This document shows positions 450 through 20,369 of a stretch of DNA of 23,620 nucleotides, one piece after another. Each line of letters starts with the position of its first letter. The stretch's first letter is position 1. The translations under genes were made by a program, and so were the position numbers. A model generated the notes under the pieces. The model ran no database searches and was not told where the DNA came from. It was given only the letters and a program-made list of their open reading frames with translations. The stretch covers positions 1-23,620 of the forward strand of contig CDMY01000757.1 of NCBI GenBank assembly GCA_001179505.1, read 5' to 3'. The stretch is from Vitrella brassicaformis CCMP3155. Taxonomy: Eukaryota; Protista; Chromerida.

Positions 450-1126
450 CTATCGCGTGCTTGTTTGTCGGTCTGGACGGGGGGTGCAGTCAAGGGGGTC
501 TCCAAGGGAGCTTCTAAGAGCGGCCAGGGGCTCGGACTTCTCGGTATCGGGATCGGGACCGGGGCCGTTCTTAATGCCTTTGCCTTCGTTCTCATCGCGC
601 TGACGGAGGTCGGGTTTCAGGGCTTTGGTGCGGTAATCGCGGCCCTTGTTCTCTCCCTTGTGTTCACGATGCCTCTCGGGCTCGTCGAGAGCGGTTCCAG
701 GGACGGCCGAGGGCCTAGAGCCGGTGGGCTTGGGGTCCTTGGCGTCGGGATCGGGGCCGTCATGGCTGGCTATGCCTTCGTTCTCATCGTGCTGTCGGAG
801 GTCGGGCTCAAGGGATTCGGTGCGGTGGTCGCGGCCTTTGTTGTCTCGCTTGTGTTCGCGCTGCCTTTCGTGCTCATCGTCGAGAGCCTGCTCGGTTCCA
901 GGGGCGGCCGAGGGCATAGCGCCGGTGGGCTTGGGGTCCTCGGCGTCGTGCTCGGGGCCAATATCGGTGCCTGCGCCTTCCTCTTCCGAGCGCTTGTGGC
1001 AACGTTTGCCGGCTGAAAGAGGGCTACGTGGGGAGGCTTTATTGTGGCGGCGTCGGCGGCCTGGGAAACCAGCCCCCCCACCTGGCAGCTGCGTGGATGT
1101 CGGACTGGGCTGCATTCGGAGGGATA
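450..1126 (-). CDS. 3' exons of a hydrophilic, low-complexity repeat protein (D/E/K/R/P/H-rich); further upstream exons likely at about 1540-1900, 5' end unresolved
   Basis: Stop-free minus frame 450..1259 carries about 2.3 imperfect ~64-67 aa repeats (DPKPTG...HERQREHK...DLRQHDENEG). Candidate splice sites: acceptor CTCTTTCAG at 1013, donor CAG|GTGGGG at 1081, acceptor CTCTAG at 1127. No recognisable domain. Confidence 0.45.
541..960. repeat. Imperfect tandem repeat, unit about 190-200 bp, about 2.3 copies
   Basis: gccttcgttctcatcg recurs at about 582 and 775; gccggtgggcttggggtcct recurs at about 720 and 921. Confidence 0.85.
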
Positions 1127-7233: not shown

Positions 7234-7805
7234 GGACACCGGCTGCATGCCTGGTGCGTGTCCAGGGGAGGATGTTCCAAAAAACAAAAGTGCAAGGGAG
7301 TGTTTACCCCAGCGCTTTACAGTGTAGCGGCATGCAGCCGTTGAACGCATTCGCGAAATCGGCATTGCCACACACCTATGACCACACCGACACTACGCAC
7401 CGGGTGAAGAAAAAACGCATTAGGGCGAGATATCGTTTCACGACATTCACGATCATTCCCCTATATGAATTTTAAAACCGGGGTTTTTTCCCACTGGAAT
7501 TCCGATGCGTGTAGGCAGCGCATGCGAGAGCTGTTTTGGTTAAGCAAAACTAGACAGCATGCTCTCGCTTTTGATCCCATTCGCATGTCGTCCGGCAGCC
7601 GAACAAAGGAGGGAAAAAAGAAAACGAATTTTGGCAATGCCTTCCGGTTTCACGGATTTCCTAAACATTCGCTTTTACTGTTTTACGGACACGCCTGCCC
7701 GAAGGGCAGAACTCCACTTGTCTCCTCGAGATCTGAGCGCACCAGTTGTAGGAGTATGAGTGAGCAGGTCAAACGCGATCTCAGTGACCATGTCAAACAG
7801 GTGCC

Positions 7806-8105
7806 NNNNNNNNNNNNNNNNNNNNNNNNNNNNNNNNNNNNNNNNNNNNNNNNNNNNNNNNNNNNNNNNNNNNNNNNNNNNNNNNNNNNNNNNNNNNNNN
7901 NNNNNNNNNNNNNNNNNNNNNNNNNNNNNNNNNNNNNNNNNNNNNNNNNNNNNNNNNNNNNNNNNNNNNNNNNNNNNNNNNNNNNNNNNNNNNNNNNNNN
8001 NNNNNNNNNNNNNNNNNNNNNNNNNNNNNNNNNNNNNNNNNNNNNNNNNNNNNNNNNNNNNNNNNNNNNNNNNNNNNNNNNNNNNNNNNNNNNNNNNNNN
8101 NNNNN
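7806..8105. other. Assembly gap (300 N)
   Basis: Run of N. Confidence 1.
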
Positions 8106-8157
8106 AAAAAGGGGCCCCCCCCCCCCCCCACCCTCGCCTGAAGAAATTCGCACCCCT
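8106..8157. mobile_element. Possible terminal end of a MITE/DNA transposon whose remainder lies in the gap
   Basis: GGGG-poly(C)-CCCTCGCCTGAAGAAATTCGCACCCCT abuts the gap and looks like a TIR end. No partner TIR or TSD is visible. Confidence 0.25.
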
Positions 8158-8186
8158 CCTGAATGTGACAGATGCGATTCATGCGA

Positions 8187-8766
8187 ATGGGTGAAGAAGA
8201 TGAGCGACGAAAGGCATTGGAGGAGAAGCAAAGACAGGCCATGGACATGCACAAATGGACGCTGGGCGTGGCCACTGCAGCCCTCCCTACCCCATCGAGG
8301 AAGTAAGCACTCGATGAGCACACCGATCAGCACGTTGCACATAACGAATGAGCACGGCAACAAGCATTCTCCGCTTCTCCATATCAGGGCGACGACAAGC
8401 TTGATGGTACATGGAAGACGCTCGTACGGCAAGTGCAATCCTGTCATCGAGGTAGAGGACGCACGACGAGGAATGGTCGTTCGCGTGTGCGAGTGCATGT
8501 GGTCTTGTGTGGGTGTGATCAGGGCTATATGGTGACCATAGCCAAGCGAGTCGAAAGCGCAAAGCGGAAGAGAGAAGACGATGATGACCAGATCGGACGG
8601 TAAGAGGGAACGTCTGCCTGCTCAATACATATGTGGTGTCCTTGTCAGGCTGGCGGCCTTTCAGGTGCAAAGCGGTGCCAAGCCAGCCCCGTCCCTGTTG
8701 CAGCCGTCAGCTCCCAAGCCGGAGGGCGGCCGACGGCCGTGGAGGCAAAGGAAGCCGAACAAATGA
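8187..8766 (+). CDS. Small 4-exon hypothetical protein (about 124 aa; may be 5'-incomplete, alternative start 8172)
   Basis: Exons 8187-8302, 8388-8451, 8523-8599 and 8649-8766 join in frame through three GT-AG introns (MGEEDERRKALEEKQRQAMDMHKW...AKRKREDDDDQIG...). Without splicing, the frame stops at TAA just inside intron 1. Confidence 0.5.
8303..8387 (+). mobile_element. Copy 1 of a duplicated 85-bp spliceosomal intron (Introner-like candidate)
   Basis: GTAAGCACTCG...CTTCTCCATATCAG; 82/85 identical to the reverse complement of 10045-10129. Confidence 0.65.
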
Positions 8767-9441
8767 GCGGAAGATTGCAGTGCGCGCTATGCCATGGCTG
8801 ACATGTCTGTGTACAGATCGAGTACAGAATTGACTGCGTTGCAGACCTTATGTTTTGTAATGTGTCCAAAAACGTACATACGGGAGACTCCTGATGCAAG
8901 AAGAGCTATCATTGTCAAAGGAATTACGGTGCGACCATTAGCGATCCAATTCCTACAGCCCGAGATCATGAAAGCAAAGATACCCCGTCGCATCACTGTA
9001 GAAACACGTTAGTCAGGTCATTCATGCCACTCACCCAGAAAATGATGAGATGATGATGTCATCAGTCACTGAGAATAACAGAAAAATCCAGTCTACGCAA
9101 TGAAAACCTTGCACCCGGCCGACGCACATGCTATGGCCGAAGGCAAATCAATTGGTGCGAGATACAGACAATGGTCATGCCCTGGCGTGACAGCGGAAAA
9201 TTCCCTGGAGGGGGAAAGGCGTCCACGAGAATCAGTGGCATGTGTACTTATCACAGATAAGTACAAACAAGTACTGTGCAGACAAATACATACATGGTAT
9301 GGAACAAGACCTACGTACGATGATGCACATACGGATCGCACAATGAATGCGATGATGCACGTATGGAGCATTTTCAGACAAAGACGGTGGGTGGAATGGG
9401 ATGCGGACAGAAATAGAGCCGTGCGATGCCCAGGCCGCCTC

Positions 9442-10610
9442 TCACGGAGCAAATGGACCTGATAGACACACGCAACAATAGAGACACACGCAACAATCCG
9501 GCACAAGATGTGAGCCCACGATGCTCAACCGTCTCTCAGTGCGCAATGTCTCACCTAGCAAGTTGCAGCGGATCTCTCCCGCAGGGTTGCGCACCGTGTG
9601 GACATTGATGTATACTCGCGCAGCCTTGATGGCATTCACCAGGGCGAGCAAAGGGTGGCCCGCCAGTTCGCCGACCAAATCAAGATCGCCAAATGGTGCA
9701 TCTGATTGCAACAGCCACGTGCAATGTGTGCCAAGAGGCCGTCCAACGTGTTTCCTGAACGACTCACCTCTGACCACCACCCCGGTGAGAGGCACTGGGT
9801 CGCCGGGAGGGATCATCGTGTTGCCGGACAGCTCTGCTCCCGTAAGCGGAGTGGGGGGAAGTACCTCGTCGCTGGGGAAGGTCTGAAAGCTGTTGAAAAG
9901 TACTTGATGACAGCTGGCTATGTCGACACCATTTCTTTGTTTGACCTACCTGTTGGAAAGGATAAATCCGACAACTCCTCCTGTACACGGAGCAGCAGGG
10001 CCCGGCTCTTCGAGGGTCGGTGTGGGCGTCCCAGTCAAGGTGCCCTGATATGGAGAAGCGGAGAATGCTTGTTGCTTTGCTCATTCGTTGTGTGCAACGT
10101 GCTGATCGGTGTGCTCATCGAGTGCTTACTTCCTCGCACAAGTGGAAATGCACACCGATGACGTCCGTCAGGTTGTCGAGCCGCAGCGTCACAAACAGGA
10201 GGCTCTGACTGGGGTCATACTTAGCCGGAAGACGCCTGACGAGACAGACATCTCCATTGTTGTTTGCACATCCTGTTTTCTGACGGACAGACTGCCGGCC
10301 ATTCGTACCTGAGAGGTCGGCACCGTTCGGGATGTCAGGAATGGGCTGCTCGACCTCTGCAACACACACAACCACACCACAGAGCATCAGTCCGAACACT
10401 CTCCTTTTCTTCTGCTCTACTCCGGACACCACCTGTGCTGCAAGGGATAGTGATAGGTGTCTGTGGGAATTGCTTCCTGTCCTTCACGATCTTCGGACCC
10501 CCCTTGCCGGGCCCAGTGGCGCCGGGCTTCTTCCCGCCGCCCTTCTTCGAGCTGTGATGCTGCCCGACAGCGACGGCCAGGACCAGGAAAATTGCGAAGA
10601 GTCGAGCCAT
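9442..10610 (-). CDS. Secreted CHRD-domain protein
   Basis: Exons 10610-10433, 10356-10309, 10272-10130, 10044-9950, 9889-9768, 9701-9555 and 9458-9442 are all phase-compatible. N-terminus MARLFAIFLVLAVAVG is signal-like. CHRD motifs: LFVTLRLDNLTDVIGVHFH and DLVGELAG...VYINVHTVRNPAGEIRCNL. Confidence 0.9.
10045..10129 (-). mobile_element. Copy 2 of the duplicated 85-bp intron, inside the CHRD domain (phase 0, EE|G)
   Basis: Splicing it out restores the CHRD reading frame (HFHLCEE|GTLTG); near-identical to 8303-8387. Confidence 0.65.
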
Positions 10611-17258: not shown

Positions 17259-18046
17259 AGTCATATATAGTGTGAGGAAATGTGTTATACCCCGCTGAGA
17301 GATCTTGATGACCTGCAAGGGTGCACAAGCAGGCAGATCAACCAGGGAAGCAGTGCTGCAGTACACTGTGAACACTGAAAGTGCACTCACATCTGACGTG
17401 AAAACACGAAACAATCAATGAGGTCCACAGTAGAAAAACAGCCATTGATTGTTTCGTGCACCCGCAACGCTGGTAGCGGTTTCAGGGAGCACCCTAGGTG
17501 GCCTGACGGCCAACTCCTGTCTCTGTCAAGTCCTCTGTGTCTCTCCCAAGACAAAAACACGCACCCTTACATGCAACACAGACACGCAACACATTTCCTC
17601 ACACTATATATGACTATGGCTTGGTCCAGCAAGAAAGGCCAAGCCATAGGCGCTGTTTCTTGCTGGACCAAGCCATAGGCGCTGCGAAGACCCTCCTTCG
17701 GTTTCACGCGTGGCACTAATGACAGGTTTCGTGAAACCGCTCTCGGCTGATGACCAACCCTGATGTCTTCACACTCAAAAAAACTCCACTGGTGGGCGCC
17801 ACCACAGCACACTGATCAACGATATGTATGCGGGATCTGCATGTGTTCTAATCGCAGGATGCAGCATATGTTCTAATCTCATCGTCTCCTGATGGCCATC
17901 CTGGTGTGGACCGTAGCGATGATGACTGTTTCGTCTGTTTCGTCTGTTCACGGCGAACGTGAGCACCCTCATGGTTCACAGTCCACTGCTTCTCTGGTTG
18001 ATCTGCCTGCTTGTGCACCCTTGCAGGTCATCAAGATCTCTCAGCG
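17259..18046. repeat. Interleaved inverted repeats and a hairpin with direct repeat
   Basis: IR-A 17259-17286 / 17588-17615 (28 bp perfect); IR-B 17293-17355 / 17984-18046 (about 63 bp, 1 mismatch); hairpin 17614-17636 / 17656-17678 (23 bp perfect); direct repeat ccaagccataggcgctg at 17639 and 17668. Confidence 0.9.
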
Positions 18047-18256
18047 TTCGTGTCTCCGCACTCGGCTCTGACTCGCAAGAGCACCTCAGGTATTTAAGTA
18101 CTGAAAATGGGACTGCACAATCACGACTGTTGGACTGCATGTCCGTCTGCATCCGTGACAGGTTTGCGGCCGTCGTTGCTGTACCGTTGCCGGGCCCTTA
18201 AGAGACGCACACGCCTCATCTCTCACCGTGCGGGCAGCTCACTTCGCGTCCTTCAC

Positions 18257-20369
18257 ATGAGTGAGGATGACGGGGAACAGGACAAGCCCAATGAGCATGT
18301 GCGCCACTTCTTCCTTCGATGTGTTTGCGTATGACTATGCAGACGCCGGTGTTGGACAAGCCCACCGCTTTCGCGACTTTCCGATCACAGAAAGCCACAT
18401 CATCTCACTGGACAAGCTCACGGACTCAGGCAGTCAGCGCGACTCTCCACTTGTGCCCACACTCGTCTCAGACTCCCCGTCCGTCCGGACGACAGTCTGC
18501 CGTCCAGAGCCTGATGTCTACGTCGGCCTCAAAAGAGTGCAGCAAAAGGTCGAGAACTAAATTCTACCCCTATTCGAGCTCGCTGACACGGATCTCCTGC
18601 GGGTGGGCCCTGCGGCGCTGACGCGGTTCGCGAGAGGGGGCAAAACTCGGTGTCTGAAGGTGCTCGGGGCCGAGCTGCAACGGAAGGGCAAGCCGGTGCT
18701 TTTCATCACGTTCAATGGACGTACCATTATGTCAGAGGCAGAGCAAGACCTCCACAAGCGCAGCGAGTTGACTCTGCTGGACTCGATGGTGCTGCGGATG
18801 ACGTGGGCTTGTGCAACAGGGGAGACAGTCGCGAGTCTGGCGAAGCAGATCGGCAAGGACCTGGGTGACATCTCGTTCGAAGACTGGAGAGACCACGTCT
18901 CTCTTGATCGGCTCCTTCTGGAGAGATGGCTCATCGGTCCCCTCATACTCATCGTGGATGAGCTCAACATGCTTCTCACGAAGGAGACCCTGGCGACACT
19001 GGATGTGGAGGGATCAGAGGACCCGATGGGGGCGAAAGCGCTGGCTGGCTTCATCAGGTCTAGGTGTCTGGGCCCGAAAGATCGCTTCTTCATCTTCAGT
19101 AGTCACGTCGCTACCGTGGGGAGAAGCATCGGGAATTATTGGGTGAACAGCAGAAGCGCCCGCAAAGTCTACAAGGTCCAGCTCCCGCGTATCGAGACGC
19201 TAGCCGAGGCAGCGGCCATCAGCCCCTCCGCCGACCATGGTGAGATTCTAGCAAGAACAAGCTGAGGAAGCTTGCTCTGAGTATCTGCTTTTTCTGTTTG
19301 CCTTTCAGGGGAGATATGCTGGACTGGCCGAGCACCTGCGCTGCTCTTTCAGCTGTACCTACAGAGCGCGACCTCCCGCGACGAGGACGATGTGCTGGCC
19401 TACTTCTCTGTCAGCACATCGATTGTCGACGCATCTACAGCCAAAGCTGTCATCCGCTCGGCGATTGTGGGGGACCTAAAGGCTCCCTCGCCTAAGGCCC
19501 CATACATTGAGTCGCTCGGCACGATGGCGGCGAATCTGGACGTCTATGGTAATGGATGTGTGTGGCCTCCCTGCTACCTGGGCCAGGCTTGCACGGACTT
19601 GGGCACGTCAATCTATGTCAAGGAGCAGCTTGGCTACCACTTTGCTGCCGATATCGGCCAGGTGGACCGATTCCTGAGACAGCTGCTGGAGCCCCGAGGC
19701 TCTGGAAAGCGGTGGGAGGGGGTGGCGGCGGCTGCCGTACTTCTACGACTGCTGGACAGCCACATTACGGCAATGGATGGATCCGAGTCGCCCACATCGT
19801 TGCTGACCGGCATGCCAGCAGACCTTCTGCCGCCTCCGGTGACAAGTAACCGTGGCTGCCCATTCGGAGGCTTTGTGGAATCGCCGGATTCAAAGAGGGA
19901 CCTGCCGCAGCTCATCGAGTGGTTCAATGGCGATGGAGTGCGCAAGGACATGAACGAAGGCTACGTGACTTACCTCGTCAAGCCCAAGAGCCCCCAATTC
20001 GAGGGCTGGGATTTCTTTGTCTTCGTCGTCGAGGACGGGGAGCTGCGCCACATCTGGGGCTACCAGTGCAAAGAAGCGACTGACTCTCCGGACAGCAGGA
20101 AGCCAACGATCGAGCGGGCTCTCCAGGCCCTCGAGAATGAGGGTCTTCTCGATGGCGGCCTGGACATTCACACCGTGTGGATGCAAAGCGATGCACCGAC
20201 TTCCTTCGACACAGCCAAGGCTGAGTCAGATCAAGCTGCTCGACCTGACAAAACGGACGACATCAACGGCACGCCGCTGTACTATCCTTCTCAGTCGTCT
20301 CTGAGGGTGTTCGTGGGATTTTCCCTGGCCGAGACCTGTCCATTCAGCTTTGTAACGGGACGAGCATGA
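18257..20369 (+). pseudogene. Crinkler/CR-effector-like P-loop NTPase plus PD-(D/E)xK restriction-endonuclease-fold protein, apparently disabled
   Basis: Walker A-like RFARGGKT (about 18624-18647) and Walker B LILIVDE (about 18945-18962). A GT-AG intron at 19240-19308 joins in frame to WTGRAPALL. C-terminal FEGWDFFVF...WGYQCKE nuclease motif. In-frame TAA at 18558-18560 (KVEN*ILPLF) and a probable frameshift at about 18310. Confidence 0.7.

What the first reader, a model, noticed from the sequence alone, without database searches (positions are those of the whole stretch)
8296..10136. The same 85-bp spliceosomal intron sits in two unrelated genes: candidate Introner-like mobile intron
Seen: 8303-8387 (+) and 10045-10129 (-) are 82/85 identical. 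Both begin GTAAGC and end CATATCAG, and both must be spliced to keep a reading frame (CHRD domain in phase 0; orphan gene in phase 2). Identity extends only 7 nt upstream (CGAGGAA) and 3 nt downstream (GGC), then the exons diverge completely (HFHLCEE|GTLTG versus PTPSRK ATTSL). Known: near-identical introns at non-homologous sites are the diagnostic of Introner elements that create new introns. Inference: this is a recent intron-transposition event with a preferred CGAGGAA^GGC-like target. No TIR or TSD is evident, so the mechanism could be RNA-based (reverse splicing) or an uncharacterised DNA route. The alternative is a local micro-duplication whose ends happen to fall near the splice sites.
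Basis: partly seen in the sequence, partly recalled or inferred. Interest (0 to 1): 0.85.

Follow-up and report, generated by a model that had tools for sequence, protein, structure and literature searches.

The report
Intron copied into the neighbouring gene
In the alga Vitrella brassicaformis, an 85-base intron plus a few exon letters of a CHRD gene was copied, flipped, into the next gene 1.65 kb away, where it is spliced out as a new intron. This looks like a single local copying event, not a mobile intron family.

Summary
Blocks 8296-8390 (+) and 10042-10136 (-) match at 92/95 positions, and the introns inside them at 82/85. Identity stops sharply at both ends.

The window is Vitrella brassicaformis CCMP3155 contig CDMY01000757.1. 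RNA contigs from two transcriptomes show both introns precisely spliced. One lies in an orphan gene on the + strand (phase 2). The other lies in the convergent CHRD gene on the - strand (phase 0).

The mobile-family reading is not supported.
- DNA contig graphs indicate two copies only.
- There are no terminal inverted repeats, no target-site duplication and no special RNA fold.
- A published survey scored this genome as lacking Introners.

An intron-less Vitrella paralogue of the CHRD gene aligns without a gap across the site. It shares part of the 10 co-copied exon letters, so those letters are native to the CHRD gene. The CHRD gene is therefore the likely donor.

Removing 94 nt from the orphan gene restores an open frame. 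Removing all 95 creates a stop. This fits a 94-nt insert (6 exon + 85 intron + 3 exon letters) with 1 nt of junction homology, which adds three codons.

Best reading: one local, inverted, DNA-level copy made during repair or replication. It is a clean, RNA-verified intron gain of moderate interest.

Earlier notes of this scan report other twin introns and short inverted copies elsewhere in this genome. I did not test them.

The parts
8296..8390 (+). 95-nt repeat block, copy 1 (inferred recipient copy): CGAGGAA + 85-nt intron + GGC
   Evidence: It appears as a separate 95-nt contig of about double depth in DNA run X2.
8303..8387 (+). 85-nt GT..AG intron of the orphan + gene, phase 2, spliced
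   Evidence: Joint 8302>8388 in RNA runs X7 and X12. L001 and L002 read ...PTPSRKATTSL.... The public protein P0002 reads across it.
10042..10136 (-). 95-nt repeat block, copy 2 (inferred donor copy)
   Evidence: X4 contig 10042-10378 runs through 10136 unbranched at flank depth.
10045..10129 (-). 85-nt GT..AG intron of the CHRD gene, phase 0 between ...HFHLCEE and GTLTG..., spliced
   Evidence: Joint 10043>10129 in X7 and X12. P0001, L001 and L002 read HLCEEGTLTG. Paralogue P0004 has no intron here.
7756..8766 (+). Orphan gene. Exons are ..7800, 8172-8302, 8388-8451, 8523-8599 and 8649-8766 (stop). The intron 7801-8171 contains the assembly gap.
   Evidence: Joints and the loose end at 8168, splice-site check, ORF open through all exons. 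The public model is 8187-8766, 124 aa. No homologue was found among 5.8 billion proteins.
9442..10610 (-). CHRD-domain gene (public model 242 aa). RNA-supported introns are 10357-10432, 10236-10308, 10045-10129, 9890-9949, 9702-9767 and 9459-9554.
   Evidence: Paralogue P0004 is 54% identical.
7806..8105 (.). 300-N assembly gap, 190 nt upstream of copy 1. It lies inside an intron of the + gene.
   Evidence: RNA contigs join ...CATGTCAAACAG (7800) to ATGCGATT (8172).

Best explanation
A one-off, local, DNA-level copying event. About 94 nt of the CHRD gene (6 exon nt, the whole 85-nt intron and 3 exon nt) was copied in inverted orientation into an exon of the convergent neighbouring gene 1.65 kb away. 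The most likely route is a templated insertion during double-strand-break repair or a replication template switch, with 1 nt (C) of junction homology. The two genes converge, so the inverted copy lies in sense orientation in its new host. It brought a complete 5' splice site, branch region and 3' splice site, so the spliceosome removes exactly 85 nt. The remaining 9 nt add three codons (R-K-A) in frame. Shown: two copies, both spliced, unrelated hosts, sharp ends, the CHRD flanks are native, and removing 94 nt restores the frame. Inferred: the direction of copying, the DNA (not RNA) template, and the repair or replication route.
For: (1) Both introns are spliced in two transcriptomes. (2) The copy number is consistent with two. 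X2 holds a 95-nt contig that is exactly 8296-8390, at depth 21.1, against neighbouring contigs at 10.9, 13.3 and 11.7. The neighbouring contigs break 30 nt inside each repeat end. X4 contig 10042-10378 crosses 10136 unbranched at depth 6.8, which equals its flanks. (3) Identity covers 7 + 3 exon nt beyond the intron. The intron-less Vitrella paralogue P0004 aligns ungapped across the site (HLCEEGTLTGTPT vs HLCTEGELTGTPT). Its DNA reads TGC ACT GAG GGC against our TGC GAG GAA|GGC. The flanks therefore belong to the CHRD gene. (4) Deleting 94 nt from the + gene gives an open frame (...LPTPSTTSLMVHG...), whereas deleting 95 gives TGA. (5) The copies are 1,651 nt apart and inverted. The same window holds two more sharp-ended local inverted copies: 63 nt at 98% and 28 nt at 100%. 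(6) There is no TIR or TSD, and the fold z-scores are +0.94 and +0.50. (7) A published survey found no Introner family in this genome.
Against: I could not search the whole assembly, so diverged copies that share too few 31-mers cannot be excluded. Contig word depth is only a proxy for copy number. No empty-site allele of the + gene was seen, and the + gene has no homologue to show its state before insertion. The paralogue lacks the intron, so the CHRD intron could itself be a gain of unknown source. A 1-nt junction homology is not diagnostic. A DNA template cannot be told apart from an RNA/cDNA template with these data.
Confidence: 0.6

Rival explanations
1. Introner or Introner-like element: a mobile intron-generating element that inserts at a preferred CGAGGAA^GGC-like target, of which these are two members.
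For: Near-identical introns at non-homologous sites, both efficiently spliced. A 10-nt target would be rare, which could keep copy number low. First-reader notes list other twin introns in this genome (untested).
Against: Copy number is consistent with two. There is no TIR or TSD and no stable fold. No other copy is present in the window or in L004. Gozashti 2022 requires at least 4 introns per family and scored Vitrella ie=0. Part of the shared flanks is conserved in the intron-less paralogue. The two copies sit in adjacent genes.
Confidence: 0.1
2. RNA-mediated copying. Either the excised CHRD intron was reverse-spliced into the neighbour's transcript and then reverse-transcribed and recombined, or a cDNA or RNA fragment of unspliced CHRD pre-mRNA was captured at a break in the + gene.
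For: The two genes are convergent and their transcripts overlap: single RNA contigs span both genes. This places CHRD pre-mRNA next to the + gene. Capture of an unspliced fragment would also carry exon flanks.
Against: Classical reverse splicing moves exactly the intron and cannot explain the 10 shared exon nt, since a chance match is about 4^-10 per site. Nothing here requires reverse transcriptase. A template 1.65 kb away in inverted orientation is what DNA template switching produces.
Confidence: 0.15
3. Opposite direction: the orphan + gene is the donor and the CHRD gene gained the intron.
For: The CHRD paralogue P0004 has no intron at this site, so the CHRD intron is not shown to be old.
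Against: The CHRD protein aligns with the paralogue without any gap at the junction. An insertion there must therefore have added 0 exon nt, which means all 10 flank nt matched the donor by chance. GA(A/G)|GGC and the preceding TGC are conserved in the paralogue.
Confidence: 0.05
4. Two older, independently present introns were homogenised by local gene conversion, with the conversion tract spilling 7 and 3 nt into the exons.
For: Close inverted repeats can convert each other. In X2 only one sequence variant of the block was assembled.
Against: It needs homology at both sites beforehand, which only moves the question back. The flanks beyond the block show no residual similarity.
Confidence: 0.05

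Closest known systems
Intron transposition / sequence-similar introns at new positions (Mycosphaerella, Oikopleura; 14 unambiguous events listed in Yenerall & Zhou 2012, PMC3443670)
   Same: An existing spliceosomal intron reappears nearly unchanged at a new position in an unrelated gene and is spliced there.
   Different: The classical model (reverse splicing plus reverse transcription) moves only the intron. Here 9-10 exon nt came along, and the copy is inverted and 1.65 kb from its source, which points to a DNA-level copy.
[quoted passage not shown] 2011, PMC3020277; reviewed in PMC3443670)
   Same: A short foreign segment inserted into an exon, with minimal junction homology, becomes an intron.
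   Different: In the described cases the filler is of unknown origin and splice sites are recruited or created. Here the filler is a ready-made intron from the neighbouring gene, and no flanking short direct repeats are seen.
Introners / Introner-like elements (Micromonas, Aureococcus, dinoflagellates, Dothideomycetes; Gozashti et al. 2022, PMC9860276)
   Same: Near-identical introns in non-homologous genes, spliced efficiently.
   Different: Families have 5 to more than 2,000 copies, many with TIRs or TSDs, and the fungal ones have stable folds. Here there are two copies in adjacent genes, with no TIR, TSD or special structure. The survey scored Vitrella negative.
Tandem genomic duplication of an AGGT-containing exon segment
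   Same: A DNA-level duplication creates a spliceable unit.
   Different: This copy is not tandem. It is inverted and non-adjacent, and it duplicates an existing intron, not exon sequence.

Membership tests
Introner / Introner-like element | Family of several (at least 4 in Gozashti 2022) near-identical introns in one genome | tested here: not met
   DNA contig depth is about 1.8x the flanks in X2, and the contig is unbranched at flank depth in X4. No further copy in the window, L004, L005 or L006. SI Table 4 gives ie=0 for Vitrella_brassicaformis_CCMP3155. The whole assembly could not be searched.
Introner / Introner-like element | Copies lie in non-homologous genes at non-homologous sites and are spliced | tested here: met
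   The exons beyond the block are unrelated. One host is an orphan and the other a CHRD protein. Both copies are spliced.
Introner / Introner-like element | Transposon hallmarks (TIR and/or locus-specific TSD) or, for fungal ILEs, an unusually stable fold | tested here: not met
   The ends are not inverted repeats of each other. No direct repeat flanks either copy. Fold z-scores are +0.94 and +0.50 against shuffles.
Introner / Introner-like element | Identity ends at the element's own boundary, with flanks being host sequence | tested here: not met
   Identity extends 7 + 3 nt into the exons. Those letters are partly conserved in the intron-less CHRD paralogue (TGC..GAR GGC), so they are donor exon sequence.
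Intron transposition by reverse splicing | Exactly the intron is transferred, without exon flanks | tested here: not met
   The shared block is 95 nt against an 85-nt intron. Only removal of 94 nt restores the + gene frame.
Intron transposition by reverse splicing | Reverse-transcriptase-dependent intermediate | not testable with these tools
   No sequence trace is expected.
Templated insertion at a break / replication template switch | Template nearby, often on the opposite strand; short insert; sharp ends | tested here: met
   The template is 1,651 nt away and inverted, the block is 95 nt and the ends are sharp. Two more such pairs lie at 17259-18046.
Templated insertion at a break / replication template switch | Junction microhomology and an empty-site allele | tested here: inconclusive
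   1 nt (C) of homology is inferred from the reading frame. No empty-site allele was available.
CHRD domain protein (PF07452), host gene only | Match to the Pfam model at or above its cut-off | tested here: met
   24.6 bits against a cut-off of 24.1 for the C-terminal exon piece. 656 CHRD-type hits in the representative search.

The most novel reading that the evidence does not exclude
Vitrella brassicaformis may have a recurrent, transposon-independent route of intron gain. Short inverted templated copies between neighbouring genes would occasionally carry a whole intron with its splice sites. This would produce many two- or three-member 'twin intron' sets, which Introner surveys discard by requiring at least 4 copies. 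This pair would be the first RNA-verified example with an inferred direction.
Probability: 0.25. Interest if true: 0.75.

Novelty: new member of a known kind. Interest (0 to 1): 0.45.

Why it matters
Recent intron gains whose source is still recognisable are rare. A 2012 review counted 14 unambiguous intron-transposition events. In this pair the donor, the recipient, splicing at both sites and the exact inserted segment can all be read. The co-copied exon letters argue for a DNA-level copy and against reverse splicing, which bears on the long-running question of how new spliceosomal introns arise. It is one event and not a family. Its wider weight depends on whether the other twin introns noted in this genome show the same signature of being local, inverted and flank-carrying.

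Tried and rejected
- Rfam scan of the window: no match.
- The search of earlier findings by place near the finding and by sequence: blank.
- Two exact-pattern scans of metagenome contigs, one with both intron ends and a gap and one with the 5' 20-mer: 0 hits. This says little, because the genome itself is not in that collection.
- Word-index homologue search for the CHRD piece: only the organism's own transcript, P0001.
- Homologue search for the + gene: only its own public model, P0002.
- Genomic context of more distant CHRD hits P0067 and P0126: short metagenome contigs without retrievable DNA. No outgroup for the intron position beyond paralogue P0004.
- Sensitive blastn and nhmmer for diverged copies in the window and in L004-L006: only chance-level hits.
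- Assembly artefact next to the 300-N gap: rejected. RNA contigs splice the copy, and an independent DNA run (X2) reproduces the repeat graph.
- Paralogous exons: rejected.
- I did not search the full-length spliced CHRD protein, because no stop-free reference for it exists.

Full report
**Observation.** The window holds an inverted repeat with arms 8296-8390 and 10042-10136. It is 95 nt long, 97% complementary, and the arms are 1,651 nt apart. My own alignment gives 92/95 for the block and 82/85 for the intron. The three differences are at block positions 47, 60 and 61. Identity outside the block drops to random level on both sides. blastn E-values are 4e-36 and 1e-33.

**Where this is.** The + strand gene product matches a 124-aa public protein of Vitrella brassicaformis CCMP3155 at 100% identity. 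That protein sits on a 23,620-nt contig, and the window is NCBI GCA_001179505.1, CDMY01000757.1. The public models are a + gene at 8187-8766 and a CHRD gene at 9442-10610 on the - strand (Pfam CHRD). A 300-N gap at 7806-8105 lies 190 nt upstream of copy 1.

- Both RNA runs show the joints 8302>8388 (GT..AG) and 10043>10129 (CT..AC, which is GT..AG on the - strand).
- On the + strand there are two further GT..AG introns, 8452-8522 and 8600-8648.
- On the - strand there are five further introns.
- Two transcript contigs held by JGI (L001, L002) carry both genes in spliced form and read ...HFHLCEEGTLTG... and ...PTPSRKATTSL....
- The loose end before 8168 equals the sequence left of the gap. The exon ends at 7800 (CAG|GTGCC) and resumes at 8172, so the gap lies inside an intron of the + gene.
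- The + gene frame is open through all exons: 198 codons up to the end of contig L001. With the intron unspliced, a TAA follows at once.
- The + gene is transcribed, spliced and probably coding. It has no homologue among 5.8 billion proteins.
- Single RNA contigs span both genes, so the two convergent transcripts overlap at their 3' ends.

**Copy number.**
- In DNA run X2 a separate 95-nt contig equals exactly 8296-8390, at depth 21.1.
- The neighbouring X2 contigs have depths of 10.9, 13.3 and 11.7. They break 30 nt inside each repeat end (8325, 8361, 10071, 10107). This is the graph of a sequence traversed twice.
- In DNA run X4, where copy 1 is not covered, contig 10042-10378 passes the 10136 boundary unbranched at depth 6.8, the same as its flanks.
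- No contig from elsewhere was laid on the element at 85% likeness or more.
- This fits two copies. Word depth is only a proxy, and copies too diverged to share 31-mers would be missed.
- No further copy exists in the window or in 13 kb of another contig.
- Gozashti et al. 2022 keep families of at least four introns. Their SI Table 4 lists Vitrella_brassicaformis_CCMP3155 with marine=1 and ie=0.

**Direction.** An exhaustive HMMER search found a Vitrella paralogue, P0004 (243 aa), encoded on CDMY01000307.1.
- It shares two intron positions with the window gene, at VVVR|D and after IRCNL.
- It reads HFHLCTEGELTG without interruption.
- The two proteins align without a gap across the junction.
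- The paralogue DNA there is TGC ACT GAG GGC, against TGC GAG GAA|GGC in the window gene.
- At least part of the ten shared exon letters is therefore native CHRD coding sequence.
- If the CHRD gene were the recipient, the insertion must have added no exon letter, so all ten flank letters would have matched the donor by chance.
- If the + gene is the recipient, no coincidence is needed.

**Anatomy of the insertion.** Deleting all 95 nt from the + gene creates an in-frame TGA. Deleting 94 nt gives an open frame...LPTPSTTSLMVHG.... The simplest history is a 94-nt insert of 6 exon nt, the 85-nt intron and 3 exon nt, with one C of junction homology. After splicing this adds AGG AAG GCG-type codons (R-K-A) in frame.

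**Features that are absent.** There are no terminal inverted repeats and no flanking direct repeats at either copy. The intron folds no better than shuffled sequence, with z-scores of +0.94 and +0.50. There is no Rfam match.

**Context.** The same window has two more sharp-ended local inverted copies: 17293-17355 / 17984-18046 (63 nt, 98%) and 17259-17286 / 17588-17615 (28 nt, 100%). Earlier notes of this scan on other pieces of this genome describe further short inverted copies between neighbouring genes and other twin introns. These are unchecked leads. They agree with a recurrent local copying process but are not independent evidence.

**Mechanism.** I judge a local, inverted, DNA-templated insertion, from break repair or a replication template switch, to be the most likely (0.6). 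The genes converge, so the flipped copy is in sense orientation in its new host, and it arrived with complete splice signals. The rivals are:
- an RNA or cDNA template (0.15);
- an Introner with a long target motif (0.1);
- the opposite direction (0.05);
- gene conversion between older introns (0.05).

**Comparison with what is known.** The event is an intron transposition in the broad sense. The 2012 review counts 14 unambiguous events, in Mycosphaerella and Oikopleura. It departs from the reverse-splicing model because exon flanks were carried along. [quoted passage not shown] It fails the tested defining features of Introners.

**Verdict.** This is a new member of a known kind: a recognisable intron copy in a new organism. 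Interest is 0.45.

**Limits.**
- I could not search the full assembly.
- No empty-site allele was available.
- Copy number rests on contig depth and graph shape.

Noticed in passing
window 10236-10308 (-), CHRD gene: Both transcriptomes splice a 73-nt intron here. That puts the signal-peptide ORF out of frame with the CHRD ORF (...GADLSGVFRLSMTPVRASCL*). By length, the public 242-aa model needs a 57-nt intron instead, and I saw no RNA support for one. The paralogue reads GLFRFVF where the RNA frame reads GVFRLSM, so the window gene may carry a real frameshift and could be decaying.
   Followed up: partly
window 17259-18046: Two more sharp-ended local inverted copies: 63 nt at 98% (17293-17355 / 17984-18046, the second inside the first exon of the gene at 17922-18560) and 28 nt at 100% (17259-17286 / 17588-17615). 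The two source arms lie side by side. The 28-nt pair could also be the TIRs of a 357-nt MITE-like element.
   Followed up: partly
window 8106-9456 and 9100-9458: The orphan + gene and the CHRD gene are convergent, and their 3' ends overlap. Single RNA contigs (L001, L002, X7 record 15) contain + strand and - strand introns spliced in one assembled sequence.
   Followed up: partly
window 8106-8360: The stretch right of the 300-N gap starts with A5 G4 C15 homopolymer runs. It has no contig in the 2012 DNA run X4 but is present in the 2015 run X2, so it is a hard-to-sequence region.
   Followed up: no
window 528-980: Tandem repeats of about 200 nt (81-84% identical) inside the first annotated gene (45-1016, +), giving a repeated Gly/Val-rich protein unit.
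   Followed up: no
L004 6001-6953 vs window 9442-10610: The two Vitrella CHRD paralogues share only two intron positions and each has private ones, so intron turnover after the duplication was substantial.
   Followed up: partly
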